64,000 nucleotides of DNA from Andalucia godoyi And28. Lineage: Eukaryota > Protista > Jakobida. The notes beneath the pieces were generated by a model, which was given only the letters and a program-made list of their open reading frames with translations, made no database searches and had not been told where the DNA came from. Within the stretch, counting starts at the first letter, position 1. Every line of letters starts with the position of its first letter. The translations under genes and the position numbers were made by a program. The DNA lies in contig VRVR01000010.1 in NCBI GenBank assembly GCA_009859145.1, positions 161,330-225,329 of the forward strand, read 5' to 3'. This document shows positions 14,406 to 64,000 of this stretch, piece after piece.

Positions 14406-14888
14406 TCTCGAAAAATAATAAATACACACACTGTCGGAGAATTGATAATAATTCGAATATTTACATATGAAAAAAACCATATGTACATAACAGTAATAAT
14501 AATAACAGTAATGTTTTAAAAACCCTAGAAACAGCAAGGCAACGAGTTTTCCGTTTGGAGGTCGAAATCCCTCAACTGGCATCAACTGCATGTGTCGCAC
14601 AGCCTCAAAAAAACGCCACTGTAGTTAACGTGGAGGGATTATGGTGATGGTTGGGAGCCTATTTAAATGCGCTTTTGCGTCTGGGAAATTTTTGATTGAT
14701 GAGTGCAAAGTGTGGCAGATATTTTTATTGCTTTATATATCATTCTGCTCGCATCCGCACGAACTCCCCCCCGCGTGCTACTGAAAGAAAGAAAAACGTG
14801 AAATTTATCAAGCGGAAGGACGGTGGGAAGGGAGGGGGAGAAAAAAAGTCCCACATATTTGAGAAAAGAAGGAGGGACAACATCAAAC

Positions 14889-17438: not shown

Positions 17439-17763
17439 GAATTCTCAGTAACATCTTCTTCGGAATATAATAACAGAGTACCTCATTATTTGAGTGTGCA
17501 TATGACTGTTTGTCTGCCTGCCTATGTGAAGTTAGTGCGTGCGTGTCTGTACAAAAGAAAAACAAGAATGCTTTCGATTTTGAATGGAATGCTTTGATAA
17601 TACAGGACAAGATAAATGATTCTTTGCTTGCTTGAGTTTCCTTTTGGCTGGTTCTGGAAAAAAAAAACGAAACAGTTCATGTACGTGCTCTGGTGCTCTG
17701 GAGAGGAGGAGCGTCTGCGCAGGTGCACCCACTCCACCCCAGACTGCAAATGTGTTTCTTGTT

Positions 17764-19338
<1,575 letters not shown>

Positions 19339-24139: not shown

Positions 24140-26728
24140 CTAAGATCTTGGAATCGAGTCAACAATTGCCAATGGAACGCAGGCACAGTAGAAAAGTGGC
24201 CGGTTCTTTCGATTTGGAAGCTGTGCAACAGCCAGCCAAATGTCCACGGGCGTCTTCTTCTTTGTGAGAATGGAAAACACGGCACTGTATTCTTGCGAAT
24301 CTCGGAGAAAAAGAGCTTGCAAGGTCTTTCGAAGTCCAATCTTGCGCAAGCCATCGACCTGCAACTCACTCTCCGCGAACATGGACACTGAACAAAACCG
24401 ATTGTTTGCAAACACGATCTGCCAGTTGGTTGACAAAATAAAGCATGGAAATGCAGAATGATAAAAGACCTTCAGGAACAAATCGTGCTTTTCGCTTGGA
24501 GGACTGCTGGAGCCAGAAACAATGCTGACATACGAATTTCCTCCGGGACTCGGACTGGCCTGCCCAATGCTCTGCTGCCCCGGCGAAGGGATCGGAGAAG
24601 AACGGCCAAAGGGACTATTCAGGTTCGTTCCAGCTCCAGTTCCAGTTGCTGGGCCTACGCCTGCGCCAGGATTGAGATTGTAAACGAATGAAGATGCTGA
24701 TGGGACTGGAGAGTTCACAGACGGAAAGAACATGGATACTGCAGAAATGTCAGGACTTCCGAAAGTCGCTCCATACGGAGATCTCCCGGGTATGGAGTGC
24801 GAGCCGTCGGGAGCTGCATCGTACTTTGGGAATGACGAGTAGGACTCGCGGAGCCGCGCAGTGGTTTGCTCGCAGTCCAGTTGCAGCTTCTGGACTCTGC
24901 CACGCAACTGCTGGATCTCTTGTTCTTTGGTCTGCAACAGCGCTTCGTAAGCATGACACTTGTCCGAGGTGCGATTCCTCTCACGTTCCATCTCTGCATA
25001 TTTGGAATCGGCAGAATTGATCTTGTTGACTGCCAGTTTCCACACTTCTTCCATATTTTGCAGCTTTTCTTGCATCTTGTGCGGCTCCTCAAGGGCATTT
25101 AATGCAGAATTGAACCGATCCACCATGTTCTTCACACGGTTCTGCGACGTCGAAACTTCGACATATGCTTCATGCTTGGTGGTGTCTCCATATCCAAATC
25201 GCTCAAGCTTGAATGCACGAAACACAGACGCAGAGACCGCGATTGACAGGACCGTATCGCGCCTGGACAATCGTTCGTTCTTGGGAGGGGAAGGGCCGCT
25301 TTGCGATTGGGGAGCTGGGCTTGTGGACGAACTCAGCGAACTTCCCGGAATGTCAATGGTAAGCTTATGGATGCCCTCAGCAGCAGCAGCACCGCCTCTT
25401 CCTCCTCCTGTTGTTTCACTGGCAACAGTAGAGCCAGGCGCAAAGGAACGAACGCTTGGCGGCGGATTCATTGAACGCTGGTCCTGTTTCCAGCTCAAAA
25501 TCTTGGACAACAGATGTGTGATGGCAATCGTAAAACTGCGAACATCGTGCTCGAGAATATCGGTCAAGATGGTCAATCGAGGCTTTTGAATTTCCAGCCA
25601 CGCAAGAAAGCCCATCTTGGCAATCATCGGATTCTCAATGATAACAATTAATCGGTCAACCGTCCGCGTTCCGCGGTTCAGCTCGGCAAAAACCTTGTCA
25701 TCTCCAACAAGCACACTTCCCGACGGAGCTGCCAGTCCTCCGGAGTGGGATCCTTTTCTCCCAAGCGCTGCAAGCGAATTACTGGAGCCTTGCAAAACAT
25801 CGTTTTCTCGTCTTCGACCAGCGGCATTGTTGATTTGCGCAAATGTCACTGTTTCTGTCCGCCTAGAATCCACAAATCCATCCGTTTCAGGCCGATTGCA
25901 GAATATTTCGCCTGAGATGCCGTCTGCAAGATCAACCAAGCCCAGCGTCAAAATTTCCAAACTAGACTGGGTAATTGCTCGTGCATCCATCGCAGCGGAT
26001 CCCACGTTGCCGCTCGAACCGCCGAATGACAGGAACGCTCCAGCTCCTGGGCCTAACCCTGAGCCATGTGCATTGCGGCCTTTTCGCTTCCTCGCTACGG
26101 GGGAACGAAGTTGGGAACCAGACTCACTCCAATCGCCCCTCGAATGAGACGGAGAAGGGACCGTACCCAGAAAGTCGTCGCTGCTGGATGCGCTATGCGT
26201 CTTGGATCTTGTACGCCCGTGCCTCTTTCCAGGGACAGTCAGTTGGTTGGAATCCATTGCGGAACCACCACCGCTCATCACTGACGAGCCAGCATTCATT
26301 CTGCTCGAGTACTTGCTCACCTTGTTTTTCTCTTCTTGCAGACTCTCTTCAAGCTTCGTCACCAGCACTCTGTATGACGTGAACTTTTGCAGCAGCGCTG
26401 TTTTCGTCTGCAACGCATCTCGCCTGAAATCCTCGAGTGCTTCGCGAGACGTGTTCTTGGCTTCGCTGCTTCCGCCACAATGTGCATCCACGCACATGCT
26501 GATCTGGCGAGCACAGCGGTCAAAGGAAGAAAAAAACTGGTCAAGTACTGCTTCAATCGTCACCATGCTTGATCCAGCTGGGCTGGATGCAGAACTCCCA
26601 TACGGCGAATGCATCGAGACATCTTGGAACGCTGGACTTGGTGAGCGAGACAGCGAATGCAGCTGCGGAAAGGCAGGCGAATGAGTTCCGCTCGCCGGGA
26701 CGCCTCTGGGCTTCGCAGGGCTACTCAT
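24140..26728 (-). CDS. Coiled-coil protein with a C-terminal PAS-like domain, 862 aa
   Basis: Long ATG ORF with two coiled-coil segments. The C-terminus LFLKVFYHSAFPCFILSTNWQIVFANNRFCSVSMFAESEL...SILTKKKTPVDIWLAVAQL fits the PAS/PAC pattern. Confidence 0.7.
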   Translation of the reverse strand: MSSPAKPRGVPASGTHSPAFPQLHSLSRSPSPAFQDVSMHSPYGSSASSPAGSSMVTIEAVLDQFFSSFDRCARQISMCVDAHCGGSSEAKNTSREALEDFRRDALQTKTALLQKFTSYRVLVTKLEESLQEEKNKVSKYSSRMNAGSSVMSGGGSAMDSNQLTVPGKRHGRTRSKTHSASSSDDFLGTVPSPSHSRGDWSESGSQLRSPVARKRKGRNAHGSGLGPGAGAFLSFGGSSGNVGSAAMDARAITQSSLEILTLGLVDLADGISGEIFCNRPETDGFVDSRRTETVTFAQINNAAGRRRENDVLQGSSNSLAALGRKGSHSGGLAAPSGSVLVGDDKVFAELNRGTRTVDRLIVIIENPMIAKMGFLAWLEIQKPRLTILTDILEHDVRSFTIAITHLLSKILSWKQDQRSMNPPPSVRSFAPGSTVASETTGGGRGGAAAAEGIHKLTIDIPGSSLSSSTSPAPQSQSGPSPPKNERLSRRDTVLSIAVSASVFRAFKLERFGYGDTTKHEAYVEVSTSQNRVKNMVDRFNSALNALEEPHKMQEKLQNMEEVWKLAVNKINSADSKYAEMERERNRTSDKCHAYEALLQTKEQEIQQLRGRVQKLQLDCEQTTARLRESYSSFPKYDAAPDGSHSIPGRSPYGATFGSPDISAVSMFFPSVNSPVPSASSFVYNLNPGAGVGPATGTGAGTNLNSPFGRSSPIPSPGQQSIGQASPSPGGNSYVSIVSGSSSPPSEKHDLFLKVFYHSAFPCFILSTNWQIVFANNRFCSVSMFAESELQVDGLRKIGLRKTLQALFLRDSQEYSAVFSILTKKKTPVDIWLAVAQLPNRKNRPLFYCACVPLAIVDSIPRS

Positions 26729-27173: not shown

Positions 27174-29234
27174 ATGGGAGGTGCTCCGTCGAAAAATTCG
27201 AGTGAGCTTTCGGGCAATCGCAACATCCCGAACGCTCTGGACGGGCTGATCGACAGAGGCGATGGTACTTCTTCTTCCAAGTCCATATTAGTTCGAGATC
27301 TCATTGTCCGCGATGTGCGGCAGTATGAGAAGCGCGTTCAAATGCTAAGTCAAGCGCAGCAGGTGCGAATGGCACCGCAAGTGCTGCGCTGGCTGAAACG
27401 AGGCTGCGAAACAAAGGAGCTGTCCGAGTTTCACAATATGATCCTCCACGGCAATTTTTGCAAGATTGGTCTACCCCAGGGCAATCCGTTTGAACTCCCT
27501 CCGGTAGCCTCCAATATATTGCTGGCTGCGAACGCCAAGAACGATGTCGTGAAAGTTGTATCGTCAACGGAGTTTGACGATGAAAAGTCTGAGACGTGGT
27601 GGAAGCTCCAGAGGAAACGGTTGTCGCGAATGGCAATTGCCGTTCAGTCATCTCAGGAAGCTGAAGCACGCGAGCATACGGCTTCCAATGCTCGGATTCT
27701 CAAGTTTGCATCACCATCGTCGTCGTCTACTCTCTTGCTTTCACAGGCTTCGACATCGACTCTTGCGAGTGTGTCTGCGCGTTTTTCACCACTGTTGACC
27801 AATGCTGGTCTGTTGACCGATACGGAATTCGAAATTCTTCTCGAAGCAACACTTTCTTTTCCGGAAACAATGATTGGGCTGGAGTTGTGCGGCTCCTTGC
27901 TGCATTCGATGCACCGTGTAAGATCACTCGAGCAGCATATTCGGAAACGGACGGTGCTGAAGAGACTGTCTCTTCACGATCTTGCGTTTCCGTCTGCAAA
28001 TCTTGGTCGGGAGGTGTGCCGGGCACTCGATAGCGCGGCAGAGATCCACGAGTCCTCGCTGCTCTCTGTACATTTTGACCAATCAGTCTCGCAGTCAGAT
28101 CCTTTTGTGGGTGCATTCTTTGACGCAGTCGGACGGCTGACGAAAAAGTGCACAAACCTTGCACATCTCTCCATGAGTTTCCGCAAGGAATCCTTCTTGG
28201 GGAAATCGTCTTTAGCGCAGACATTGGAAGAGGAGCATGCAAATGCATTGTCAGGCATGATTCAGACGATCACTAGTTCCGGCTGCGCTGCTCTGCAAGA
28301 GCTCAGTCTCGTCGGAATGGGTCTTGGCCAGTACCCATTTCTAGTCAGCACGCTTGTGCAGTATCTCAAGTCTCCCGGACGTCGATTAGTTCATCTCGAC
28401 TTGTCTGTATGTTTTCTGCGTACATTGTTACGCGACCTTTCGCTTCTGTTTCCTTTCTCGTTTTCTTGTTTTTCGACCAGCTGTTCAGTGATTCATCGTT
28501 ACTCACGGAGGAGGAGCAGCATAACATGATGAATTCAGATGTCACGCTGTGGCTTGCAGAAGGGTTCACAGAACGGAAAGACACGGTTGGTGATCGTCTT
28601 CTGAGCTTTTTCTACATTGGCAATCGATGCAGTGGTGCAGGGGTGGCCGCCCTCTGCGATGCGTTTGCTCATCATCCGCGTCTCATCCAGTTGGATCTCA
28701 GTGAGTATGTTCTTCTTCTTCTTCTTTTTTCCTCTACCTCTTTACTGGTTGTCGATGCGTTTCACTCACGTAATTCAACGGATTTTGCACAGGAATCTTG
28801 GCAAAGCCCAGGGAGCACAGGGTCTGGCTGGACTGTTGAATCAGAACAAACGGATCAAGCACATTGGATACAATTACAATGAGTGTCCGCTCGCAGAAGC
28901 TGTTTCAATCGCCAATGCCATCCGGCAGAGTTCGAATCTGGAGTACATTGCATTTGTCGGAAACCACGTGCAGGACATGTTCCTGCGCGGTATCTGCGAT
29001 GCTTTGCGGTCTCCGACTTGTGCAATCCTGGCTCTCAATCTCGAATCAAACTCTTTCTCCGGAAATGCCGTTCTTGCCTTTGCACGAGCTCTTGCGTTCA
29101 ACCGCTCACTATGCTACCTTGCGCTGGAACGAGGCAACGGCGGCGAGGTAGTGCTTTACACCCGAATTCGCAACCAGCTCAAGAAGAACTTGGCAAGACG
29201 AGCGAAATATTCTCGCTCTCTCCTGATTCCGTAG
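27174..29234 (+). CDS. RNI-like (NLRC3/CARMIL-type) leucine-rich repeat protein; join(27174..28406,28481..28704,28793..29234), about 632 aa
   Basis: Two GTATGT...AG introns join three ORFs in frame. Repeats such as LALNLESNSFSGNAVLAFARALAFNRSLCYL; N-terminal MGGAPS myristoylation-like motif. Confidence 0.8.
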
Positions 29235-44573: not shown

Positions 44574-45989
44574 TCAGAGTCTGAGAGGAGGAGATGAATC
44601 GGGGGTGGCAGAAAAAAGAATGTTCTTAACGACGCACTTCGACAAGACTGCGACATGCATGGGGCTCCAGTCCTCCCCGGCATCTCTATTGAGACCAAAA
44701 AGGCGATTTGCATCGTCAAGTTTTCGAAAGAGCGAGTGCACGGCGTCGAAACCAGTGCACATTTTGGAAGCGGCAACGGTCGGGCGAAGAAGACCGTCGG
44801 TGCAAACATCGTCTTTGGAAGAATGCAGATTAGGGCAGAGGATAAACAGACGATCTTGGATATGACGATGTCGAAAGCACTCCACGACAGCAGCACCAAT
44901 ATCATTGCCTGGGCTGACCATTTCTGCAGACCGGGAACATATGAGAATCAGGTGCGCTTCACGGAGCAACGGATGCCGAACGTACGAAAAGGATGCCAAG
45001 TCCTTGTGCCGCAACAGCACGTGTTTCTCATGGATAATAAAACGATCTGCCATTGCCTCCTTTAACAGATCCACAAGCCGGGAACAGCGCTCCAAGCCCC
45101 TCTCCACCGAGATCATCTGGTCTCCCAATATGCAGATGCTCACGTGTCGTTTTCCAACACCCGATATGTCGGTCAGCTTCGACGAAGACACCGACCGTGA
45201 GACAGAAGCATCCGTTCCAGGAGGAGGACAATAACCCACTGTCGGCTCCCCTTGCTTATGCATTTCAACAGCAGTCGTCTTGGCTTTGGAAGACAGCAGT
45301 AACGCATGAGCACTTGCGTTGTGATTTCGAGAATCATTGTTGTCGAAATCCGCACGTCTCGATGCTTGCTGAACGATGCCCAGGTCGGGAAGAGACGCCG
45401 AAACCGTGAGCTGCGACGAACTGGAGCTTCTGCGCCTAGCATGGTCTCTGTTGATCACCGTTGGCGCAGACGTGTCGATCCGGACATGATGCTCATGAAG
45501 ATGAGGATGTGGCCTGCTGTCGGTAGCACTGGACAACGAGCCCGATTCATCCGAGGAGACGATTGTAGAAATGGACTCTTCCGATGGCGAGGCAGAAATA
45601 CTGTCGGGATACCCTTGACTCAATGTCGATTTTGCTGCAGCATGCGTGAGCACAACGGAAAAGACAAACCGAACTGGAACACGATTGAACATATCATACA
45701 AGAACGGCATGTTGTTCCGGGTGCAATAGCTTTTGGCAGGGGGCCGAGGACATTGACCCTCGGTTGTCTTCTGTGGGTTCGCTGCGCTTCCTGCGCGTTT
45801 GGAAATCCCTGCTTCCTCTTCAGAGCTGTGTGGTGCGCCGAAAGGCTCCAAGACTCGAACGTCTTCCAGCTGGAGCGATACTTCCACGCTTGCATCCGCA
45901 CCGAGTTTCTGATGTGCGAATTCACAGAGACCTTCGTAGCTTGGGTGCTCCAGCAGATCAACAGGAGACAACTCACATAAGAACCGCAT
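44574..45989 (-). CDS. Hypothetical protein with a C-terminal degenerate small-GTPase-like domain, about 471 aa
   Basis: Long ORF with an uncertain start; see the corresponding finding for motif mapping. Confidence 0.6.
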   Translation of the reverse strand: MRFLCELSPVDLLEHPSYEGLCEFAHQKLGADASVEVSLQLEDVRVLEPFGAPHSSEEEAGISKRAGSAANPQKTTEGQCPRPPAKSYCTRNNMPFLYDMFNRVPVRFVFSVVLTHAAAKSTLSQGYPDSISASPSEESISTIVSSDESGSLSSATDSRPHPHLHEHHVRIDTSAPTVINRDHARRRSSSSSQLTVSASLPDLGIVQQASRRADFDNNDSRNHNASAHALLLSSKAKTTAVEMHKQGEPTVGYCPPPGTDASVSRSVSSSKLTDISGVGKRHVSICILGDQMISVERGLERCSRLVDLLKEAMADRFIIHEKHVLLRHKDLASFSYVRHPLLREAHLILICSRSAEMVSPGNDIGAAVVECFRHRHIQDRLFILCPNLHSSKDDVCTDGLLRPTVAASKMCTGFDAVHSLFRKLDDANRLFGLNRDAGEDWSPMHVAVLSKCVVKNILFSATPDSSPPLRL

Positions 45990-46467
45990 AAGGAGGTCAA
46001 AACGTGTATACGTACGCAGATCGCAGACACATCCAACCCACAAAAAAAAAAGATTAAGTGTTAAACATTTGATTTTTCAACAAACACAAAAAGAGAAAGC
46101 AGGTTTGACTACTTCCTCCTCTTTTTAATTTTTAAAAATCGAAAAACGAAGGAAAATACAACGTATGGGTGATAATCCTGTGTTCCCTCCCGGCAGTCAT
46201 AGAACACGTCAGCTCCACGCTCCAATAAAAACCCAAACGAGAAGTTTGGAACGGAGTTTTTTCCTCATTTCCTGTTTCACGATTAGCGATTTGTATCTGT
46301 TCCTCTTGAACTTGTTGGAGCATTCCAGCGTCAAAGCAGAACCCAACCCCCCCCCGGCTCCAAAAAAAAAAACCGAAGCAGCTGCAACATCAGGAGACCA
46401 CGATGGCAGCACATAACGGCCCTTCTGCTGATGATGAATGGATGGTGACGAGGGTCCCGTTTCCTGG

Positions 46468-53198: not shown

Positions 53199-54785
53199 AT
53201 GATCGATGACAATGAGTACGTTTCGAAACACACTCTTTGTTCTTGGATTGAATCCGTTTGCGAGCAGTTGAAATTGGGCGATGCGTCTGCAACTATTAAA
53301 TTGGACCGGTGGACGGATGCCGTGTATTTTTACTCGATCAGGAATTCGTACTTTTGGGCGCATTTCGTGGCACAACGGTTTCTTATTCGTCTAGCAGATT
53401 TGAACGATGACGCGATGCAGGAACTTGGCGACGTTACGTTCCAAAGGCTGGTCATCGTCATGTGCCGGTTTCCTTGCGCTCTGTACGGTTCCTCTCATTT
53501 TCAATGCGTTTCTCGGGTATGGAAGCATTTCAAGCGTGTTGCGCTGGTTGTTGATCTCACTAGGTACCATAAGCTACGTATTGCATTCCATTTGGTATTG
53601 CATCATGTTTCAATGTTGGCGAATCCGAAAGCAGTCGAACTTTCATTTGAGGGCGGTGCGAGCGATAGGAAGTACATCGATGTCCTGCGGTACAGTTGGG
53701 ATCCTGTTCTTTTGGGTCGTGTATTGCGAGGGCTGATTGGGAATCCCGTAGCGTGCAAACACTATTGTCAAACGCTTCCGTGGTTTGGGACGTCCCTGGG
53801 CATCAAAATTGGATGCTGCTGGGCGTTTGGAAATGAATCGGAGAAATGGAGACTGAAAGCCACAGAAGGGCTGTGGATGCTGTTGCAATATTGCGGCGCT
53901 CCGGAAAACATGCCATTTTCGTTTTCAGTTTCGCTGACTAAGCGGTTGCATTGTCTGTTTCTGGAAGCAGGGGACGTTGACGAGGCACTCACTCTGATCT
54001 CTTGGCTCGGCAAAGCGCCGCTGCCGGACAAGCTTCTCAGCTACCTCGCCCAGATTCTGATGCTGGGCATTTTCGGAAGACTGCACTCTATACCAGGCAG
54101 TCGATTCCAGGAGACTGCACATGCTGTCCTCAGCATTCTTGGACGTATTGCAAACCAAACTGCTGATGCATTTGTTGCTCGCGTAGTGTTTGATCCACCT
54201 TTGACGTTGCGCGACATTGACGTCCCGTCCAGTGCGTCAATCCTCGTTTCTGGAAAAGGAAGCAAACCGAAAACCGCTACAGCGCGCCGTACGAAAGTCC
54301 CCAGTCTTGTTTCCCTGGCATTTTCCTCGAATACGTCCTTGTTGTCCGCGAAACAAGCAAAGAAACCACGAATCAAGGTTCGGGTGCGGACGATGGAGTA
54401 TTTCTTTTCCTTTTGTTTTCTGGCAGTGCATACGCACTCCGAGTACTATTCCGAGTTCGCCCAGTGGAAAGAGCGACTGATTCGATGGGTTCCAGAACAC
54501 ATTTCTCGAACGCTTTTGCCGTTCTCGCTGAATCGCTGCCGCGAACTTGGCGGTGCTGCAAGATTAGAGAATTTGCGTGCTGCACGATTTGCAGCGTCTT
54601 TTCCAACATTCGCGTTGTCGTGCTCCCGTCATGGAACACTGCGGCACAGAGTTTGTAGCTCCGCAGCTCAGCTTGCTAGGTTTCTCGTTGAGTGCAAGTC
54701 CGTGGAAGATGCGTCAGATTTACTTGGTCGAGGGTTTCTTGGCTTCTTGCAGTCCTATTTGGTTAACGTGTTGTTGAGAGAATGA
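53199..54785 (+). CDS. Hypothetical helical protein, 528 aa
   Basis: Uninterrupted ORF; no family recognised. Confidence 0.6.
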   Translation: MIDDNEYVSKHTLCSWIESVCEQLKLGDASATIKLDRWTDAVYFYSIRNSYFWAHFVAQRFLIRLADLNDDAMQELGDVTFQRLVIVMCRFPCALYGSSHFQCVSRVWKHFKRVALVVDLTRYHKLRIAFHLVLHHVSMLANPKAVELSFEGGASDRKYIDVLRYSWDPVLLGRVLRGLIGNPVACKHYCQTLPWFGTSLGIKIGCCWAFGNESEKWRLKATEGLWMLLQYCGAPENMPFSFSVSLTKRLHCLFLEAGDVDEALTLISWLGKAPLPDKLLSYLAQILMLGIFGRLHSIPGSRFQETAHAVLSILGRIANQTADAFVARVVFDPPLTLRDIDVPSSASILVSGKGSKPKTATARRTKVPSLVSLAFSSNTSLLSAKQAKKPRIKVRVRTMEYFFSFCFLAVHTHSEYYSEFAQWKERLIRWVPEHISRTLLPFSLNRCRELGGAARLENLRAARFAASFPTFALSCSRHGTLRHRVCSSAAQLARFLVECKSVEDASDLLGRGFLGFLQSYLVNVLLRE

Positions 54786-55638: not shown

Positions 55639-56487
55639 CCGTCCAACGGCTGATCGTTTTGTGCATCAATATTGAACATCAAACAAGCAACATCATACCG
55701 GACGTTTTGCTTATCCAACCCCTGTGGGGACGCGAAGTTCTTACCGTAGTCAAGTCAAGAATTTCTTTCATTCATCTCTTTTTTCTTTTCTTTCTATTAT
55801 TCCTTCTGCTTGTGTTTAATAATCGAACCCTCAATCAGCACCTTTCATCAGAGACAAAACATCTCATGGTTCCAAAGAGGGATCTTCCCAATAAGCTCAA
55901 ACCGGCCGTGCCCGAAGACACCGAGAACCATGAAATCCGCTGATCTCCTCTCGTCGCAACTTGCTGAGCAAGCGGATGATCAACAAATCACGACGATGTG
56001 ATCGATTTGCGTTCGGAATGCGTTTTCAAGTCAGAGAACAAGAAGGAGCAATGACAAATGCGTCGTTCGCCGACCACATTCTGTTTCCTTCAACGTTCAT
56101 CTTTTGAATGTTGAATCAATTGGTGAATATGTTTGCTGCGATAACCCTTTGACTGCACTGAAAAGTTGGTGCTCGCGCCACAACTAAAAGCAAAGCACAT
56201 GCGGCGGCTTTGGATCCTGTCGCTTAGCTGATGGTCAATAATGATTCATATTTTGGCGAGCGGTCAGCTTGTCCCATCAGGAACAAGTTCCTCTGGTTTA
56301 CCTGTACCCACTCTGTCGACGATTGTCAACAAGCAGCGGTCGATCTTACAAGCATGGGACGTGCAAAAAACGTTAATCGACCGGGCCTTCTTTGTTTTGT
56401 TATATAACATGTTGCCTTTGTTTCGTTCTTTCTCCGATGTACCGGCTTTCTCGTTTCCTTTTCGCACCCCTTCAAAGCCAGAAACGG

Positions 56488-57928
56488 ATGGAAGACATTA
56501 GACCGCATCTTCATAAATGTGTGTTTGTTGTGGGACCTACTGCGTCCGGCAAGTCAGCAGTTGCGATTCAGCTGGCGAAGGTCTTTGACGGGGAGGTAGT
56601 CAACTGCGATGCAATGCAGAGCTACAAGGGACTTGATATCGTAACTAACAAGGCTTCTGCATCCGATCAGCAAGGCATTCCGCATCACTTGATGTCGTTT
56701 ATTGATCCATTTGCAACACCCTACGTTCCGTTTGACATCCGAAAATTCACGGACGTTGCTGTTGCAACAGTATGTCGTGCCTTGTTAGATCGTCTTTCTT
56801 TTTCATCTTTTTTGAGCATCCTTTTTCTTGTCTGATTAGTAAGTTGAATAGATTACCGATATCATTGGCCGGAAGAAGATGCCGATTGTATGTGGAGGAA
56901 CCAATTATTATGTGCAGTCGCTTCTTCTGAAATCGTCCTTGGTCAATGAATCCTCAGAAAATGAGGAAGATGACGAGCTGTTGACAGCAGAATTGGATTC
57001 GCGAGATTCGAAAAGCTTGTATGCAGAGCTGCAGCGCATTGATCCGATCATGGCAGTTAAGCTGCATCCTAATGACAAGCGCAAAATTCTGCGAGCGCTG
57101 CAAGTTTTTCACAAGAAAGGCATACCATACTCGGAAATACTCGTTCAACAAGAGTCAAAAGGCATGGGTACGTTTAGGCCGTCCAATATGAGGTACGATG
57201 CAATGGTACTGTCCGTGACTGCGCCACGGGATGTTTTGAACCGCCGGATCGATGAGCGAGTTGAGCAGATGTTCGAGAATGGACTTCTGAACGAGATCCG
57301 AGATTTTCACAAGAGGCTTGGCCAACCAGAAGTATTCCCGAATCAAGGGCTCCTGCAGTCAATAGGATTCAAAGAGTTTCTTCCCTTCTTGCAGTCTGCA
57401 GAATCACTTGGGGAATGCAAGGAGGCGATGAAGGGTCGGACACGTCGATACGCGATTCGGCAAGCACATTGGATTCAGCACCAGTTTGTGAATCGAGGTC
57501 TTCCAATTTTCGAAATTCGATCCCCTTGGCTTTCTCATGAACCTGAAGGATACTTTGGGGATATCACAGCCGCTGTCAACGGCTTTTGTGCGACTCCTTC
57601 TTGCTATGACTCCATTTACAACAACAACAGCGATATCCGTGGAAAGCTTACGAACAGAACTGTCAAAATAACGCCAGCATCGGGTACGGCCCTGTCGAGG
57701 CCGCAGACAACACTGACGTGGAAAAAAGTTCGTTGTGAATCATGCAACATCACAATGAATGGTGAAAACGAATGGACCGTTCATCTGCAGTCGTCCAAAC
57801 ACAAGCGTCAGCTTAGATATTTGAAGGAAGTGGTAAACAGGCCGTCGCAAGCCAAGAAACCACGATTGCAATCGAATGACTCTGAATCGACGACAGCTCC
57901 AGCGACAGATACGCATGGAGGGCTCTAA
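56488..57928 (+). CDS. TRIT1: tRNA dimethylallyltransferase with a C-terminal zinc finger; join(56488..56769,56852..57928), 452 aa
   Basis: GPTASGKS, DAMQSYKGLDIVTNK, PIVCGGTNYY, LHPNDKRKILRAL, QSIGFKEF and the finger CESC...HLQSSKH. Confidence 0.95.
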
Positions 57929-58228: not shown

Positions 58229-58894
58229 TTACAAAGCAGACTTTGGAGCCCTGGAATCGGCAGATCGCAGACCAGTTGCAAGCCAATCCGCTTCGCATGC
58301 CTTTGTAAACTCTCCTCTCTTTGGCCGCATAGACTTACTCGTTGGTGAATCTGCAACAAGTGCGCGTTTATCCGTCACACCCATTATAGAATGCGATGCG
58401 TCATGTTCACGATGCACTGTTGGCTTGTACGCCTCCGATGGATTGTATCGCTCGTGCTTCTGTGCATCCCATTCTGCTTGTTTCTTTGCCGTTAACGAAA
58501 GTCGCTGCGCTGGTTCGGCGGCAACACCTCGAGAACCAGACCCACCAGAAAAGTTTTGGAACGTCGAACTAGCTGTCGAAGTCATCGTTCGCTGTTCGAA
58601 ATCCTTTCCATGGCCAAAAAGCATTGATCCAGGCAGGGCACGAGCTTCCATTGCCGCTGTCTCCAGTCCCGATGTTCGAGATTCCATGGGCTGCGGAGTA
58701 AATGCAGCTGCGCTCGTGGAAGTGTAATTCAAAGACTCGTACTTTGGCGAAAAATCAAACTTTTCATTGTGCGTCGTGCGGTCTTCGTACCAATTGTTCT
58801 CAAGTGTTCCGCGCGAATAGCTGTTCTTGTGCGATGAGTAGCCGATTCCTTCAGCATGCACAATTCGGTTCGTTGCAGGAGTAAGACGAGTCAT
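58229..58894 (-). CDS. Probable ciliary microtubule inner protein with an NWE-type motif (CFAP68/CFAP95/CFAP107-like), 221 aa
   Basis: YSRGTLENNWYEDR near the N-terminus, followed by short Mn-like S/T-rich helices (YTSTSAAAF, MTSTASSTF). Confidence 0.65.
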   Translation of the reverse strand: MTRLTPATNRIVHAEGIGYSSHKNSYSRGTLENNWYEDRTTHNEKFDFSPKYESLNYTSTSAAAFTPQPMESRTSGLETAAMEARALPGSMLFGHGKDFEQRTMTSTASSTFQNFSGGSGSRGVAAEPAQRLSLTAKKQAEWDAQKHERYNPSEAYKPTVHREHDASHSIMGVTDKRALVADSPTSKSMRPKRGEFTKACEADWLATGLRSADSRAPKSAL

Positions 58895-59438: not shown

Positions 59439-62400
59439 ATGAGTGCCATTGATCCACTGTCCGCGGTGGTTGGAGAAGCTGCAATCGCCGAAGTCCCGAA
59501 AAGAAGAAAAAGATCATCGTTTGCAACGTTATTCTGTCGTGTATGGTTCGTCACTGTTGTCATTTTGTTTTTGTTTGTAATGGCGGTTTCTTTTGTGTCC
59601 GTGTACATTATTGCGACTCACCGTTGGTCATCGAATTTCAAAGTCCGAGGGAAAACGTCGCTCGCATCCTTGAAAATACGCAACACTGCGGAAGTCGGCT
59701 CTGCGTCAGTTAATTCATGGACGACTGTCAGTGGTCTGTTTTCAGTATCCGGCGCTCTAGAGATATCCTCATATCTGTTTGTGAGTGGCCGTGTCCGTGT
59801 AGCAAAGAATCTGAGTCTTTCTGGAGAATCTAAGATTGGAAATATGAATGTTGTTTCGGGAGACTTGTACTGTCGAGGCGCCTTGGCTGTTACCAACGGA
59901 CTGTTGGTGAGTTCGAATTTTTCGTATGAAGCAGCGAAAGGAACGGTCTTTTCGCTCGGGCCCTCTCAAGGTGCGCTTGCTGCCTCCTCTGCTGCGACGC
60001 CCCCAACACCATCAATGTTCGTAGTACGTGGAAATGCATATTTTCATCCGTCATCCAACGTGACTTTTGGTATTCCGGTTTCCATCGCTGGCTCGTTGAC
60101 TGCCAACTCTCTCCGGATTTCTGGGAACCTCACACTTTTTGGTCCACTGTCGGGGAGGCAGACGACTCTGACGGTGCGCCAGTCCTTGACAGTCTGTGGT
60201 CAGTTACAGTTCTTGAACAGTTCTTCTGTGCTCTCAGCGCACAATCTGGTTGCTATGGGGAGTGTTTCCGGAAAGGATTTGTTGCTGAATGCTTCGCGGG
60301 GGGGTTTCCTTGCGCTTGGTCCTGTTTCTGTTGCGAGACGCTTTTTTGGTTCCAATGTTTCCACTGACCAGACGACAATTGTTCGGCACGGTTTCCTGGT
60401 CGCTGGCAAGATGCAGATTCTACAAACCGGACTTGTCATTGGAAACATGTCCTCACGTGCTCTCAAGATCCGCAATGCAACTGTGGAAGTGAGTGGGCGT
60501 TTCATAGCCTCGCAAGATGCGACTTTACCAGCTGCTTTTTCCACGTCCAATTTTTCGACGCAAGGCAACCTGTCAATTGTTGGCTCCATTTATGCGGACG
60601 CAGCGACTTTCGCGGATTCGGTGCTGAACATGAACGGGACATTGAACGTTTCTGTTGCACACCTCCGTGACCTGCATGCTCCGCGATCCGTCCTCTTCAT
60701 AACGTCCTTTCAGGGCTTGGGCAGCATGTCGGTATCAAGAAATGCATCGTTCTTGGGGTCGTTGAGCATTGTGGGTCCGTTGAATGTCACCAATATGCGT
60801 GTACGAAATTTCGAGGTCAGAGACGCTGATTTCTCCGTTTCGGATTCGATCAGCGTCCGTGGCTTGTTCCGTTCCCGTGATCCTGTTGTTGTTTCGTCTT
60901 CGTTTTTCGTTCGCTCGTCTACAATTGGGGGGCAGTTGAACTTTTCGCTTTTGGGGACACGCGCTACTGTGAGTGACTCGATGTTCGTCTCAAACACAAC
61001 TACTGTTTTGGGAACCACGACAGTTCGGCTGAACTCATCATTTAGCGGTCCGCTTCAAATCTATAGTTCCGGTTTTGTTAAGACTTTCATGTCCGTTGAC
61101 GGGGACGTCGAGGTCGGTGGGTCGCTTTCCTGCCAATCTCTCTTGGTTGACAATGCTGTCCATCCTCGCATGTTCGTCACCAGCAACATGACAGTTAATG
61201 GTTGTCTGAACCTGACGGTGGAGGAGCTTCAAGTAACCAGCGAGCTGCACGCTGCGAATTTCGGGATTCATGGAAACGTATCTGTCACTGACTTGCGGAT
61301 AACAGATATGTCCTTTGTCGATGGTAGCATCGACGTCAGTGACTCTCTAGTTGTGAATGGAGATATTATGATGGGAAGCGGACTGCGCGCGTACTGTGTG
61401 ACCATTAACAGCTCAAGGATCACTGGAGAGTCAACTTTCTCGGATTTCATTTCGAACGGGGTTTTAATCGTCCACCGGAACATGTCTGCCAATGTGCTGA
61501 GCTCGGCCATGATGGGCATCAACGTCAGGAATGGAACAGTGGCAAATGATTTGCTTATCGCTTCCGAGGTATTTATCGGACCCAGCGAAAGAGTTGCCAT
61601 TCGAGGATCGCTTCTTCTTTCTGGTGATGCTGTTGTCAGCGGAACCCGTGTGACAATCGGTGGGACCATATCCGCCAACAACGTCACCGTACCGTCGGCT
61701 TCGCATATTGTGGTACTTTCTTCGATCAATGCCTCTCGTATGATGGTGCAATCCGACGTGGTTGCAGAGGGCAGCATTGTTGTAGATGGCCATATTTTAC
61801 TGACGAGTGCTCTTTTTGCTTCTGATCTTGTCATTTCAAGGAATTTGGTTGTCCGTTCGTTCCACGCTTCGGGGAATGTTATTGCACTCGATTCAATGGT
61901 GTCGGACACAGTGATTGCAAAGGCCCCAGTTGTCATCTCAGGTAACGTGACTGTGGTTGGCTCACTGAGCGTAGGCTTGTTATCCACGTCCTCTATGCAG
62001 ATCTTCGGATCTTTGTCGGGCAGCGGTAACATGTCTGTCCGCGAAGATGTCTTTATTTTTGGATCCTTGAGCGTATCTGACATGCTTGTTGGAAGCGTTG
62101 CAGTGGAATCGGTGTTTGTTGACATCTTGCAATCAGCAAGGGATGCAGTTTTTGGTGATTCCTTGTTGATTAACGGAGATGTCAGTGCTATTTCCGGCGC
62201 TTTCTGCAAGTCGCTCGTCGTGTCTGCTGACGCAGTTTTTGACGGCGACATCTTGGTGAATGGTAGCTGCAACGTGTCTTCGGAGACGTTTGTACACGGC
62301 TTGGCACAGTTCAAACGAGGATTGTCTGTGGCAGGAAGTGTTTCTGCAAACGAATTGTTGTTTTCTTCGAATGTTACAATTCTTGGCTCGATGAATATTT

Positions 62401-64000
62401 CCTCGCCTCCTCAATCTGAAACTTCCCCGCCGTCGGCAGTCATCGGTGCTATGCTCATGGTTGGAAGCGATTTGACAATTTCAGGATCTCTCAGCAGCTA
62501 TGCAGAAGTGCGTGTGAGTGAGGATGCGTATTTTTCAGGGTACACTCGGTGGCCCGTCGGTGCGGCTGTGACCGGTTCCTCGTTCCTAGAAAACTTGATC
62601 GTTTGGGATGATGTTCGATTGCACGGAAACCTGATTGTGGAAGGAAATGCATCCTTCCAAGGAATTCTCCAAACCTCAGCTGACAAGGTGGTATTCAACT
62701 CTCCGTTGGTTTGTCTTGATCATTTCAATCGCTCCACAGAATACATTTGGGTTCTCAATAGTGGAATTGATGTCGGGACAAATAGATTCATGGGCCTCAA
62801 TCGTGTGCTCGGCGATCCGTCGGCGACAGCCATCGAGCTTAGGCCTGGTAATTGCTCTGGACTGTGGGTCTATGCGAATGGCACCGTTGGATTAGGAACC
62901 TCCAGTCCCCGTAAGGATGCGGGATTGCATATCCAAGGGGACGTTGTCCTTGGAACTCGACTTGGCGAGCGAGTCTTGCTGACTCCTTTTTGTAATGACA
63001 ATGCCTCGGACTTTTCCTGCTTTCAGTTTGCCCCCGAATGGCCGGCACTCCCCAATGTCTGGGACTTTTCCCTCGGCGTGACTGTCAGGGAAAACGGATA
63101 TGTTGGCATGCATACGATCTCTCCTTGCGTCATGCTGGACATCAACTCAAACAACAGTTTCATTGAAGCTGACATTATTCTTCGTGATGGAGGATTGCTG
63201 TCCTTGAAAAACGCGAGTGGATCTGCTTTGATTTTCGATTCTGTCGAGGCTGGGGTCCCCACTGCAGGGCAAGGTGCGGGACTGCGTTTACGTTTCGATG
63301 AGGACTACTCCGCTGCAGGGTTATCCGCTATTGTTTTTGAGCAGACGGTTGGATCTGGATCATATTCGGGTGCCAAAATTCTGTTCCGCACAAGGATGCA
63401 AGGCAATCCACAAAGTTCGTTGACGGGAATCATCATTGATTCTGCAAATCAGAGAGTGGCATTTGGTGCACAGAGTCCGTTGATGAGCTTCGATGCTCAA
63501 CTTGCTGTGTCGTTCGAGACAGATGTCGTATTCCACGATCTGCTGAAGTTGGATGGATTTTATACTCGAACATTGTTTTATTCCGCTACGAATGAGCAAG
63601 GGATTCCGGATGCACAAGGCGTCAGAATTCGGTATGATGAACGTTTTGATGGCCCTCTGAAAGATGCCCTTTTGTTTGAGCTGACAGTACCTGGCTCTAG
63701 CGCTCCATCGCATGCTTTTGAAATGATTTTCATCAACTCTGCGCTTGTGTCCACAAGCGCTATGCGGATTCAGGGAGATGGCAGGATTGGACTGGGAACT
63801 GCAACGCCGACATTGGGAAAAGTTCTGGATGTTTCAGGAGATGTGCAAGTGCGAAGTGATTTGTATTTGGATGGCTGCTTCGTCTTCAATCTGTACAGTT
63901 CTATGGATAGGGTCCTTTTCCATGTTCCAGGAGATTCATTGCAAGAGGATTTTCAGGTGCGCATTCGTCCCGCTTCGGATTATCCGGGTATTCCTCCTTC
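59439..64000 (+). CDS. Giant type II membrane protein with a beta-stranded stalk and tail-fibre-like modules; 3'-partial, >1520 aa
   Basis: Translated by hand: in-frame TAA at 59415, ATG at 59439, and no stop codon to the window end. KRRKR is followed by a TM helix, then about 1050 aa of G-x-(L/V)-x-(V/I)-x-G repeats, then GxVGLGTxxP-type motifs. Not listed in the ORF track. Confidence 0.9.
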   Translation, partial: MSAIDPLSAVVGEAAIAEVPKRRKRSSFATLFCRVWFVTVVILFLFVMAVSFVSVYIIATHRWSSNFKVRGKTSLASLKIRNTAEVGSASVNSWTTVSGLFSVSGALEISSYLFVSGRVRVAKNLSLSGESKIGNMNVVSGDLYCRGALAVTNGLLVSSNFSYEAAKGTVFSLGPSQGALAASSAATPPTPSMFVVRGNAYFHPSSNVTFGIPVSIAGSLTANSLRISGNLTLFGPLSGRQTTLTVRQSLTVCGQLQFLNSSSVLSAHNLVAMGSVSGKDLLLNASRGGFLALGPVSVARRFFGSNVSTDQTTIVRHGFLVAGKMQILQTGLVIGNMSSRALKIRNATVEVSGRFIASQDATLPAAFSTSNFSTQGNLSIVGSIYADAATFADSVLNMNGTLNVSVAHLRDLHAPRSVLFITSFQGLGSMSVSRNASFLGSLSIVGPLNVTNMRVRNFEVRDADFSVSDSISVRGLFRSRDPVVVSSSFFVRSSTIGGQLNFSLLGTRATVSDSMFVSNTTTVLGTTTVRLNSSFSGPLQIYSSGFVKTFMSVDGDVEVGGSLSCQSLLVDNAVHPRMFVTSNMTVNGCLNLTVEELQVTSELHAANFGIHGNVSVTDLRITDMSFVDGSIDVSDSLVVNGDIMMGSGLRAYCVTINSSRITGESTFSDFISNGVLIVHRNMSANVLSSAMMGINVRNGTVANDLLIASEVFIGPSERVAIRGSLLLSGDAVVSGTRVTIGGTISANNVTVPSASHIVVLSSINASRMMVQSDVVAEGSIVVDGHILLTSALFASDLVISRNLVVRSFHASGNVIALDSMVSDTVIAKAPVVISGNVTVVGSLSVGLLSTSSMQIFGSLSGSGNMSVREDVFIFGSLSVSDMLVGSVAVESVFVDILQSARDAVFGDSLLINGDVSAISGAFCKSLVVSADAVFDGDILVNGSCNVSSETFVHGLAQFKRGLSVAGSVSANELLFSSNVTILGSMNISSPPQSETSPPSAVIGAMLMVGSDLTISGSLSSYAEVRVSEDAYFSGYTRWPVGAAVTGSSFLENLIVWDDVRLHGNLIVEGNASFQGILQTSADKVVFNSPLVCLDHFNRSTEYIWVLNSGIDVGTNRFMGLNRVLGDPSATAIELRPGNCSGLWVYANGTVGLGTSSPRKDAGLHIQGDVVLGTRLGERVLLTPFCNDNASDFSCFQFAPEWPALPNVWDFSLGVTVRENGYVGMHTISPCVMLDINSNNSFIEADIILRDGGLLSLKNASGSALIFDSVEAGVPTAGQGAGLRLRFDEDYSAAGLSAIVFEQTVGSGSYSGAKILFRTRMQGNPQSSLTGIIIDSANQRVAFGAQSPLMSFDAQLAVSFETDVVFHDLLKLDGFYTRTLFYSATNEQGIPDAQGVRIRYDERFDGPLKDALLFELTVPGSSAPSHAFEMIFINSALVSTSAMRIQGDGRIGLGTATPTLGKVLDVSGDVQVRSDLYLDGCFVFNLYSSMDRVLFHVPGDSLQEDFQVRIRPASDYPGIPP

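What the first reader, a model, noticed from the sequence alone, without database searches (positions are those of the whole stretch)
59439..64000. Membrane-anchored, phage-tail-fibre-like giant protein in a eukaryote (missed by the ORF track)
Seen: one intronless frame open for >1520 codons. It begins MSAIDPLSAVVGEAAIAEVPKRRKRSSF, then a hydrophobic helix (VWFVTVVILFLFVMAVSFVSVYII), which implies type II topology with an external C-terminus. A long beta-rich stalk follows, then four motifs: NGTVGLGTSSP..GLHIQG (62877), NGYVGMHTISP..MLDI (63093), NQRVAFGAQSP (63447) and MRIQGDGRIGLGTATP..VLDVSG (63777). Established: the 'MRI...GNVGIGTTSP...LDV.G' pattern typifies bacterial, phage and giant-virus tail-fibre-like trimeric proteins. 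These often end in a self-cleaving intramolecular chaperone (Peptidase_S74), a domain eukaryotes are known to have co-opted in MYRF/MrfA. Inference: this is a domesticated viral/bacterial fibre displayed as a long trimeric surface filament, for adhesion, prey capture, or scale/extrusome structure. It sits among ordinary host genes with no viral neighbours on the visible side.
Basis: partly seen in the sequence, partly recalled or inferred. Interest (0 to 1): 0.85.

Follow-up and report, generated by a model that had tools for sequence, protein, structure and literature searches.

The report
Bacterial-type surface fibre in Andalucia
A nuclear gene of the bacteria-eating protist Andalucia godoyi encodes a 1,961-residue membrane-anchored fibre whose outer modules are homologous to the trimeric recognition fibres of predatory bacteria and phages, but it lacks their self-cleaving chaperone and lies among ordinary host genes.

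Summary
The frame from 59439 is open to the window end. The database copy (P0001) continues 441 residues further, giving 1,961 aa. There is one N-terminal membrane helix, and the four quoted motifs sit exactly where stated.

The window is Andalucia godoyi, a jakobid: two published proteins match it letter for letter.

Anatomy:
- a 30-aa tail and a signal-anchor helix;
- a stalk of about 990 aa with 6-residue periodicity, bactofilin-like in the paralogue ANDGO_01802;
- about seven modules of roughly 100 aa;
- a Cys-rich, all-beta tip of unknown fold.

The modules are homologous to those of bacterial 'tail fiber domain-containing' proteins; 20 of 73 relatives scanned carry Peptidase_S74. They also match the solved Bdellovibrio MAT fibres (profile E 2.9e-17, also top Foldseek hits), MYRF weakly, and cyanophage fibres.

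No Peptidase_S74 is found in any of the four eukaryotic members. N-glycosylation sequons are enriched about twofold in the three full-length eukaryotic proteins and not in the bacterial relatives. Codon usage equals that of the neighbours, and a relative's orthologue has host genes on both sides.

Verdict: a long-resident host gene of bacterial or phage ancestry, closest to non-S74 MAT fibres. Trimerisation, surface display and prey binding are inferred.

The parts
59439..64000 (+). Coding sequence of the giant fibre protein (residues 1-1520 of 1,961; continues past the window end)
   Evidence: Open frame with no stops. Upstream in-frame stop ends at 59417. Identical to P0001 over 1,196 aa.
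59439..59528 (+). Short N-terminal cytosolic tail (res 1-30) with a basic cluster just before the helix
   Evidence: Read from the sequence. Relatives have longer tails, 85 and about 145 aa, before their helix.
59529..59612 (+). Single transmembrane signal-anchor helix (res ~31-58)
   Evidence: Top Kyte-Doolittle 19-mers, mean 2.5-2.9, all lie here. The helix and the juxtamembrane stretch align with P0003 and P0008.
59619..62588 (+). Beta-solenoid stalk (res ~61-1050) with hexapeptide periodicity and rich in N-x-S/T sequons
   Evidence: Hydrophobic autocorrelation peaks at 6 and 12 residues. PHROG 4549 'tail fiber protein', E 3.7e-12. Aligned with the stalk of paralogue P0008, which passes Pfam Bactofilin at 1.8e-14. 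Thirty-two of the 39 sequons lie here.
60411..60413 (+). Internal ATG used as start by the database gene model P0001 (residue 325); probably a truncated annotation
   Evidence: The region upstream of it is open and aligns with P0003 (res 20-233 vs 68-289, E 6e-8).
62589..62843 (+). Neck between stalk and modules (res 1051-1135)
   Evidence: Aligned with P0003 and P0008. No family assignment.
62844..64000 (+). First four of about seven MAT/tail-fibre-type modules of roughly 100 aa (res 1136-1520); three more and the tip lie beyond the window
   Evidence: The exhaustive search gave 106 relatives. PDB profile hits to Bdellovibrio MAT fibres.
62877..62948 (+). Capping-loop-type motif 1 (res 1147-1170)
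   Evidence: Partial module match at res 1142-1170.
63093..63158 (+). Capping-loop-type motif 2 (res 1219-1240)
63267..63491 (+). Module instance at res 1277-1351, ending in motif 3 (nt 63447)
   Evidence: Module profile i-E 4.8e-7.
63570..63863 (+). Best-conserved module, res 1378-1475, ending in motif 4 (nt 63777)
   Evidence: Module profile i-E 3.7e-27. AF2 pLDDT about 85-92 over this stretch. This is the stretch most bacterial relatives hit.

Best explanation
This is a long-resident nuclear gene of Andalucia godoyi. It encodes a type II membrane-anchored, probably heavily N-glycosylated extracellular fibre.

Shown:
- The gene and its anatomy.
- Homology of its C-terminal modules to bacterial 'tail fiber domain-containing' proteins, to the crystallographically trimeric Bdellovibrio MAT fibres and to phage fibres.
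- Absence of the Peptidase_S74 chaperone.
- A paralogue in the same genome and an orthologue in a related organism.
- Host-like codon usage and host gene neighbours.

Inferred mechanism:
- The signal-anchor helix inserts the protein with its N-terminus in the cytosol.
- The roughly 1,900-residue ectodomain passes through the secretory pathway and is N-glycosylated.
- The C-terminal modules assemble as an intertwined three-chain beta-helix, each unit bounded by capping loops as in MAT fibres.
- The hexapeptide solenoid stalk holds this head roughly 60-130 nm from the membrane.
- The Cys-rich tip, probably disulphide-bonded, is the ligand-binding end. It stands where non-S74 MAT fibres carry their exchangeable adhesive tips.

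Most likely role, the least certain step: binding surface structures of bacteria, the food of this flagellate. General adhesion is the alternative. The ancestry is bacterial or phage, followed by eukaryote-specific remodelling: membrane anchor, sequons, new tip.
For: Organism:
- The published A. godoyi DLD (ANDGO_02527) and tRNA isopentenyltransferase (ANDGO_02568) N-termini are found exactly in the window.

Homology:
- The exhaustive phmmer search gave 106 relatives.
- Twenty of 73 scanned carry PF13884 and 4 match Bactofilin.
- Named ones are from Moorena, Pleurocapsa, Anaerolineae and Bacteroidota.
- A module profile finds 484 instances in 105 proteins.
- A PDB profile search hits Bd2133 (8OND, E 2.9e-17), 8OML, 8OJN, 8OL4, 8ON4 and MYRF 7DC3 (8.7e-4).
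- The AF2 model has mean pLDDT 72, about 90 in the best module. Its top Foldseek PDB hits are the same Bdellovibrio fibres at probability 1.0.
- There are 158 BFVD hits, led by cyanophage S74/IMC fibres.
- The last motif and the junction to the tip align with Bd2133 (E 5.8e-5).
- MAT fibres are surface-displayed trimers with S74 and non-S74 subgroups and a shared capping-loop motif also present in MYRF (PMC10769870).

Eukaryotic adaptation:
- The TM anchor is conserved in P0003 and P0008.
- Sequons are enriched at z = 5.5, 3.2 and 5.6 in the three full-length eukaryotic proteins, against a mean z of -0.03 and none above 3 in 102 other hits. All sequons lie C-terminal of the helix.

Residency:
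- GC is 0.49, GC3 is 0.50, and RSCU correlates at r = 0.78 with neighbours, whose own range is 0.55-0.82.
- The visible neighbours are host genes.
- The orthologue P0003 lies between TatD and an MFS transporter gene.
- The paralogue ANDGO_01802 aligns over 1,340 aa at E 7e-32.

Food: A. godoyi is grown on live bacteria (PMC7050145).
Against: - Trimerisation is not tested; only a monomer could be modelled, and TM-scores to solved fibres are low (0.2-0.5).
- The tip model is unusable (pLDDT 38), so no binding fold is known.
- The stalk resembles bactofilin, a single-chain solenoid, which need not be trimeric.
- Only 4 of the 7 motif-led units reach significance with the module profile.
- Nothing was available on transcription, localisation, glycosylation or ligand.
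- DNA downstream of the gene in A. godoyi was not seen.
- The charge bias around the helix is modest, 6 versus 4 basic residues (read).
- The database gene model starts at residue 325 and would lack the anchor.
Confidence: 0.6

Rival explanations
1. It is a structural coat or substrate-attachment filament (glycocalyx, cyst wall or surface lattice). It would be built mainly from single-chain beta-solenoids, with no role in recognising bacteria. The fibre modules would be retained only as a rigid scaffold.
For: - Half of the protein is a hexapeptide-periodic stalk, and in the paralogue this passes Pfam Bactofilin.
- Sequon density is high, typical of coat glycoproteins.
- The tip has no recognisable lectin or adhesin fold.
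- The three full-length members diverge strongly (24-28% identity).
Against: - The C-terminal position of a distinct, conserved tip after a last capping loop mirrors the adhesive-tip layout of non-S74 MAT fibres (PMC10769870).
- All solved relatives are recognition or adhesion fibres.
Confidence: 0.28
2. The gene belongs to an integrated virus or virus-like element, such as a polinton-like virus or a giant-virus insert. Its other genes would lie downstream, outside the window.
For: - Polinton-like viruses in protist genomes commonly encode very large phage-like fibre proteins (PMC12220804).
- The downstream flank in A. godoyi was not seen.
- The fold matches many virion fibres.
Against: - No PF13884, which is the hallmark of those viral fibres.
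- A membrane anchor and sequon enrichment make no sense for a virion fibre.
- Codon usage and GC are indistinguishable from host genes.
- Sixty kb upstream is host.
- The orthologue has host genes on both sides.
- A divergent paralogue points to old duplication in the host lineage.
- There is no phage DNA or protein match.
Confidence: 0.03
3. It is a MYRF-like membrane-tethered factor. A trimeric fibre segment would drive self-cleavage and release part of the protein.
For: The module profile weakly hits the MYRF stalk (7DC3, E 8.7e-4) through the shared loop motif. Both are single-pass membrane proteins.
Against: - No Peptidase_S74/ICA domain and no DNA-binding domain.
- The cytosolic part is only 30 residues.
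- The fibre modules lie on the opposite, sequon-rich side of the membrane.
Confidence: 0.02
4. It is bacterial contamination or an assembly chimera at the contig end. A. godoyi cultures contain food bacteria.
For: The relatives are overwhelmingly bacterial. The culture is non-axenic. The gene lies at the window edge.
Against: - It is contiguous with 59 kb of A. godoyi genes and has the same GC and codon usage.
- It has a eukaryote-type anchor and sequon enrichment that bacterial relatives lack.
- Best identity to any bacterial protein is about 30-40%, and only within single modules.
- There is a paralogue in the same genome, and an orthologue between eukaryotic genes on an independent contig.
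Confidence: 0.01

Closest known systems
Bdellovibrio bacteriovorus mosaic adhesive trimer (MAT) fibres, non-S74 subgroup (Bd2133, Bd1334, Bd2439; PDB 8OND, 8OML, 8OL4/8ONF; PMC10769870)
   Same: - Repeated beta-helix units of about 100 aa, bounded by the same capping-loop motif (profile E 2.9e-17; top Foldseek hits).
- No S74 chaperone.
- A distinct tip domain after the last capping loop.
- Displayed by a cell, not a virion.
- The owner feeds on bacteria.
   Different: - Eukaryotic host.
- An N-terminal transmembrane signal-anchor in place of a signal peptide plus the conserved ~130-aa MAT N-domain.
- A bactofilin-like stalk of about 990 aa.
- N-glycosylation sequon enrichment.
- A Cys-rich tip with no detectable relative outside four eukaryotic sequences.
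- About twice the length.
Bacterial 'tail fiber domain-containing proteins' (Cyanobacteria, Bacteroidota, Chloroflexota) ending in Peptidase_S74 (PF13884)
   Same: These are the nearest sequence relatives of the modules (E down to 4e-20). Some also carry bactofilin-like segments upstream of the modules.
   Different: They have signal peptides, are mostly 300-1,400 aa, often end in S74 with a coiled-coil tail, and show no sequon enrichment.
Phage tail fibres and tailspikes with an intramolecular chaperone (K1F endosialidase 3GW6, T5 L-shaped fibre 4UW8, cyanophage S74 fibres)
   Same: Same fold class by Foldseek: 158 BFVD hits at E<=1e-3, and 4UW8 only weakly in the PDB list.
   Different: No sequence-level match to any phage record. 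No chaperone domain. Not part of a virion gene set.
MYRF / MrfA (eukaryotic co-option of the S74/ICA domain with its beta-helical stalk; PDB 7DC3, 5YHU)
   Same: A eukaryotic single-pass membrane protein carrying the same capping-loop motif.
   Different: MYRF has a DNA-binding domain and a working ICA domain on the cytosolic side, and only a short stalk. The protein here has neither domain, and its fibre is extracellular.
Bactofilin (PF04519) beta-helical polymers
   Same: Hexapeptide-based periodicity of the stalk. The paralogue ANDGO_01802 scores 54 bits against a cut-off of 27.9.
   Different: The window protein itself has no significant PF04519 hit. Bactofilins are small cytoplasmic polymer-forming proteins, not extracellular stalks.
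Fibre proteins of polinton-like viruses integrated in protist genomes (PMC12220804)
   Same: Very large phage-like fibre genes found inside protist genomes.
   Different: Those end in PF13884 and sit inside 14-40 kb viral elements. This gene has neither feature.

Membership tests
MAT fibre superfamily (PMC10769870) | Repeated beta-helix units carrying the capping-loop motif defined in that paper | tested here: met
   Profile of the modules hits five MAT structures (best E 2.9e-17), aligned on the motif. The same structures are the top Foldseek hits. The motif core occurs 5 times against 0.04 expected.
MAT fibre superfamily (PMC10769870) | [quoted passage not shown] | tested here: not met
   The N-terminus is a 30-aa tail plus a transmembrane helix followed directly by the stalk. 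No MAT chain matched the N-terminal part. The solved chains do not include that N-domain, so its absence rests mainly on the different anatomy.
MAT fibre superfamily (PMC10769870) | Intertwined homotrimer along the fibre | not testable with these tools
   Only monomer prediction was available. Trimerisation is inferred from homology.
MAT fibre superfamily (PMC10769870) | C-terminus is either S74 or an independently folding alternative tip (NS74) | tested here: met
   No S74. A distinct tip of about 170 aa follows the last capping loop and is conserved in four eukaryotic sequences. Its fold is unknown.
Peptidase_S74 / intramolecular chaperone proteins (PF13884) | C-terminal PF13884 domain | tested here: not met
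   The full C-terminus was scanned at E<=10 with no hit. There is none in P0002, P0003 or P0008. Twenty of 73 bacterial relatives do have it.
MYRF family | Ndt80-type DNA-binding domain plus ICA domain N-terminal of the membrane helix | tested here: not met
   No such Pfam hits. Only 30 residues precede the helix.
Bactofilin (PF04519) | Significant match to the bactofilin beta-helix profile | tested here: inconclusive
   The window protein has no hit. The paralogue P0008 scores 1.8e-14, above the cut-off. That region of P0008 aligns with the window stalk, and both share the 6-residue periodicity.
Integrated viral element (polinton-like virus, giant-virus insert) | Neighbouring capsid, packaging or integrase genes and foreign composition | tested here: not met
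   The upstream 59 kb is host genes. Composition and codon usage are host-like. The orthologue is flanked by host genes on both sides. The downstream flank in A. godoyi was not available.

The most novel reading that the evidence does not exclude
A phagotrophic eukaryote has taken a bacterial or phage receptor-binding fibre and put it on a membrane anchor. It passes the fibre through its glycosylation pathway and uses it as a prey-recognition receptor. That would make it a eukaryotic counterpart of the Bdellovibrio MAT fibres. The two old paralogues with shared architecture would be the beginnings of a recognition repertoire.
Probability: 0.3. Interest if true: 0.85.

Novelty: new variant of a known kind. 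Interest (0 to 1): 0.62.

Why it matters
How free-living bacterivorous flagellates recognise and hold their prey is poorly known at the molecular level. Jakobids are a reference lineage for early eukaryote evolution. A host-encoded, membrane-anchored relative of the fibres that phages and predatory bacteria use to recognise bacterial surfaces would be a concrete candidate receptor. It would also be only the second kind of eukaryotic co-option of this fibre fold after MYRF, here used outside the cell and without the S74 chaperone. In addition:
- it shows that a bactofilin-like solenoid can serve as an extracellular stalk in a eukaryote;
- it defines a ~100-aa module, widespread in bacteria (484 instances in 105 proteins), that Pfam-A did not match in any protein scanned;
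- it shows that the public gene model is probably truncated and lacks the anchor.

Tried and rejected
- Whole-protein searches against Pfam, NCBIfam, PADLOC and PDB sequences gave nothing useful.
- The same tool with the tip alignment returned nothing, not even the input proteins, so that result is uninformative.
- tblastn of residues 1051-1520 against 50,697 phage records: no match.
- tblastn of the protein against the window: no paralogue within the 64 kb.
- BLAST self-comparison does not detect the module repeats; they appear only by motif and profile.
- The tip-domain AF2 model, from a 4-sequence alignment, has pLDDT 38 and was not used.
- The metagenome scan with the tip found no relative.
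- Exact look-ups of P0001, a window neighbour and P0008 found no contig, so the downstream flank could not be read.
- Nearest-neighbour ranking of single modules does not group the eukaryotic modules together. Each is closer to conserved bacterial modules, so it says nothing about one versus several acquisitions. Common origin rests on the shared overall architecture and tip.
- A literature search for the run SRR15116022, and for A. godoyi together with tail fibres, found nothing relevant.

Full report
**Observation.** Translating 59439-64000 (+) gives 1,520 codons without a stop. An in-frame stop ends at 59417, so 59439 is the first available ATG. The ORF list omits the frame only because it runs off the window. 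The protein search returned one entry, P0001 (1,637 aa). It is identical to the frame from residue 325 (nt 60411) onward and continues 441 residues past the window. From the first ATG the protein is 1,961 aa. The only strongly hydrophobic segment is at residues ~31-58. The four quoted motifs are at the stated coordinates. Three more motif-led units follow outside the window, at residues 1560, 1658 and 1757. The motif core occurs 5 times against 0.04 expected by shuffling.

**Whose genome.** Neighbouring ORFs are ordinary eukaryotic genes:
- tRNA isopentenyltransferase with a JAZ zinc finger;
- ubiquitin-conjugating enzyme;
- MFS sugar transporter;
- phosphoglucomutase;
- aminotransferase;
- WD40, NHL, LRR and TPR proteins;
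- an STL11/RBM22-type protein;
- dihydrolipoamide dehydrogenase (DLD);
- a Zn2Cys6 protein.

The supplement of the Andalucia godoyi genome paper prints protein sequences. The first 100 residues of its DLD (ANDGO_02527) and the first 74 of its tRNA isopentenyltransferase (ANDGO_02568) occur letter for letter in the window, at nt 19230 (-) and from 56437 (+). The window is therefore A. godoyi nuclear DNA. This jakobid has a ~20 Mb, compact, intron-poor genome and is grown on live bacteria as food (PMC7050145).

**Anatomy.**
1. Residues 1-30 form a tail with a basic cluster.
2. Residues ~31-58 form one membrane helix.
3. Residues ~61-1050 form a Ser/Val/Gly/Leu-rich stalk whose hydrophobic positions recur every 6 residues (autocorrelation 0.26 at 6 and 0.13 at 12).
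4. A neck follows.
5. From ~1136 to ~1800 there are about seven units of roughly 100 aa, each carrying the motif. A profile of the unit detects four of them significantly. The best is residues 1378-1475, at i-E 3.7e-27.
6. Residues ~1800-1961 form a tip with a cysteine-dense patch and a beta-rich end.

There are 39 N-x-S/T sequons against 18.9 expected (z = 5.5), all C-terminal of the helix.

**Relatives.** An exhaustive phmmer search of 1.84 billion representatives with residues 1051-1961 gave 106 hits. Three share the whole design.
- P0003 (2,276 aa) comes from a 14.6-kb contig of sequencing run SRR15116022.
- P0008 is A. godoyi ANDGO_01802 (1,707 aa), a paralogue in the same genome, aligned over 1,340 residues at E 7e-32.
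- P0002 is a 376-aa metagenomic C-terminal fragment, 38-40% identical to P0001 depending on the tool.

The three full-length proteins each have a tail, a single helix, a similar juxtamembrane stretch, a 6-periodic stalk, modules and the same tip. The window region upstream of the annotated start aligns with P0003 (residues 20-233 vs 68-289, E 6e-8). P0001 therefore looks like an N-terminally truncated gene model.

P0003 scores higher with the window protein (253 bits) than P0008 does with either (134 and 87 bits). By inference, the two A. godoyi paralogues separated before the split from the SRR15116022 organism. That organism is a relative: its DLD is 71% identical, and a TPR gene and an LRR gene lie beside it, as in the window. 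Its fibre gene lies between TatD and MFS-transporter genes, with CAP-Gly and ASTER genes beyond. That is host context on both sides.

**The other ~100 hits are bacterial.**
- Named examples are 'tail fiber domain-containing protein' or hypothetical proteins of Moorena, Pleurocapsa, Anaerolineae and Bacteroidota.
- Of 73 scanned, 20 carry Peptidase_S74 (PF13884) and 4 match Bactofilin.
- Pfam-A matched the repeated unit in none of the proteins scanned.
- The unit profile finds 484 instances in 105 proteins.

**Solved structures.** A profile of residues 1271-1600 plus 70 homologous segments (A3) hits five Bdellovibrio bacteriovorus fibre structures: 8OND Bd2133 at E 2.9e-17, then 8OML, 8OJN, 8OL4 and 8ON4. 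It also hits MYRF 7DC3 at 8.7e-4. All alignments fall on the motif.

These are the 'mosaic adhesive trimer' (MAT) fibres (PMC10769870). According to that paper:
- they are displayed on the predator surface;
- they are built as intertwined trimeric beta-helices;
- their units are bounded by capping loops with a consensus motif that the authors also found in MYRF;
- they fall into S74-terminated and non-S74 members, and the non-S74 members carry exchangeable adhesive tips.

**Predicted structures.** The AF2 model of residues 1271-1600 has mean pLDDT 72, about 85-92 across the best module.
- Its top Foldseek PDB hits are the same Bdellovibrio fibres (probability 1.0). TM-scores are low, as expected when one chain of an intertwined trimer is modelled alone.
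- In the viral library there are 158 hits at E<=1e-3, led by cyanophage 'Peptidase S74' and 'intramolecular chaperone' fibres.
- The tip profile (A4) aligns with Bd2133 only through the last capping loop and the junction that precedes its tip (E 5.8e-5).
- The tip model itself is unusable (pLDDT 38).

**What is not there.**
- No PF13884 hit in the complete C-terminus even at E<=10, and none in P0002, P0003 or P0008.
- No DNA-binding domain.
- No match to any phage record.
- No defence-system match.

**The stalk.** The window stalk gives PHROG 4549 'tail fiber protein' at 3.7e-12 and no Pfam hit. The paralogue's stalk passes Pfam Bactofilin (1.8e-14, 54 bits against a cut-off of 27.9). That region aligns with the window stalk. 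The stalk is best described as a bactofilin-like hexapeptide solenoid. Whether three such solenoids run side by side or intertwine is unknown.

**Host gene or foreign body.**
- GC is 0.49 and GC3 is 0.50. RSCU correlates with pooled neighbours at r = 0.78, inside the neighbours' own range of 0.55-0.82.
- Sequon enrichment is seen in all three full-length eukaryotic proteins (z = 5.5, 3.2, 5.6) and in none of 102 other hits (mean z = -0.03). This is a signature of passage through a eukaryotic secretory pathway.
- Together with the anchor, the paralogue and the orthologue's host flanks, this argues against contamination, an assembly chimera or an integrated virus. Polinton-like viruses do put large S74-terminated fibres into protist genomes (PMC12220804), but neither S74 nor viral neighbours are seen here.
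- The one gap is that the downstream flank in A. godoyi could not be retrieved.

**Mechanism.**
- Shown: the architecture, the homologies and the residency.
- Inferred: N-in/C-out insertion, N-glycosylation, trimerisation of the module region by analogy with MAT fibres and MYRF, and a disulphide-stabilised tip as the business end.
- Length is a rough inference. The MAT paper gives about 150 A for the 370-residue Bd2133 tip construct and about 550 A for the Bd3182 model. At 4.8 A per 18-residue solenoid turn, the ectodomain would span roughly 60-130 nm.
- Role: A. godoyi lives on bacteria, and every characterised relative is a device for recognising bacterial or cell surfaces. Prey or surface adhesion is therefore the most likely function, but nothing here tests it. 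A structural coat role is the main rival.

**Comparison and novelty.** It works like, and is homologous to, non-S74 MAT fibres. It fails one family feature, the MAT N-terminal domain. It also adds a membrane anchor, a long bactofilin-like stalk, sequon enrichment and a tip seen only in four eukaryotic sequences. It is not a Peptidase_S74 protein and not a MYRF relative in any functional sense. No paper in the library links A. godoyi to such a protein, and ANDGO_01802 is named 'hypothetical protein'. I class it as a new variant of a known kind. It is interesting as a candidate eukaryotic prey-recognition fibre and as a second, extracellular co-option of the phage-fibre fold. The functional claims remain inference.

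Noticed in passing
window 17764-19320 (-) and 56437-57928 (+): The window is identified as Andalucia godoyi. The DLD here equals ANDGO_02527. The tRNA isopentenyltransferase ANDGO_02568 has its first coding stretch at 56437 onward and its main ORF at 56879-57928. That fits the single 82-nt intron listed for it in the paper's table.
   Followed up: yes
window 60411: The database gene model P0001 starts at an internal ATG (residue 325). It would lack the tail, the membrane helix and the first 260 stalk residues. Conservation with P0003 and P0008 indicates the true start is at or near 59439.
   Followed up: partly
window 61268-62314 (-): A 348-codon antisense ORF (TTG start) lies wholly inside the giant gene. 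It is probably a by-product of the biased composition of the sense strand. No homology was looked for.
   Followed up: no
window 60001-64000: AT skew is strongly negative (-0.21 and -0.18) and GC skew positive across the giant gene, unlike most of the window. This presumably reflects its Ser/Val/Leu/Phe/Gly-rich codon content.
   Followed up: no
window 13341-19320; L002 1246-5739: The gene set LRR - TPR - DLD is also found together on a contig of the related organism in SRR15116022, so local gene content is conserved. The relative orientation of the LRR gene appears to differ.
   Followed up: partly
window 58229-58894 (-), 53199-54785 (+), 44574-46043 (-), 24140-26728 (-), 27174-28529 (+), 11211-13202 (+), 8375-9403 (+): Several long ORFs have no Pfam match. 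They include the 221-aa ORF immediately upstream of the fibre gene on the opposite strand. The relative has a TatD gene in that position, so no conserved partner or chaperone gene is evident.
   Followed up: no
window 19784-21937 (+): An ORF carries a fungal-type Zn2Cys6 binuclear cluster domain (PF00172, E 2e-7) in a jakobid genome.
   Followed up: no
P0008 (ANDGO_01802) residues 434-533: The stalk of the A. godoyi paralogue passes the Pfam Bactofilin threshold. This would be an extracellular, eukaryotic use of a bactofilin-like solenoid. Four bacterial relatives also carry such segments upstream of their fibre modules.
   Followed up: partly
bacterial relatives P0004-P0106: The ~100-aa module is abundant in bacteria (484 instances in 105 proteins), yet Pfam-A matched it in none of the proteins scanned.
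   Followed up: partly
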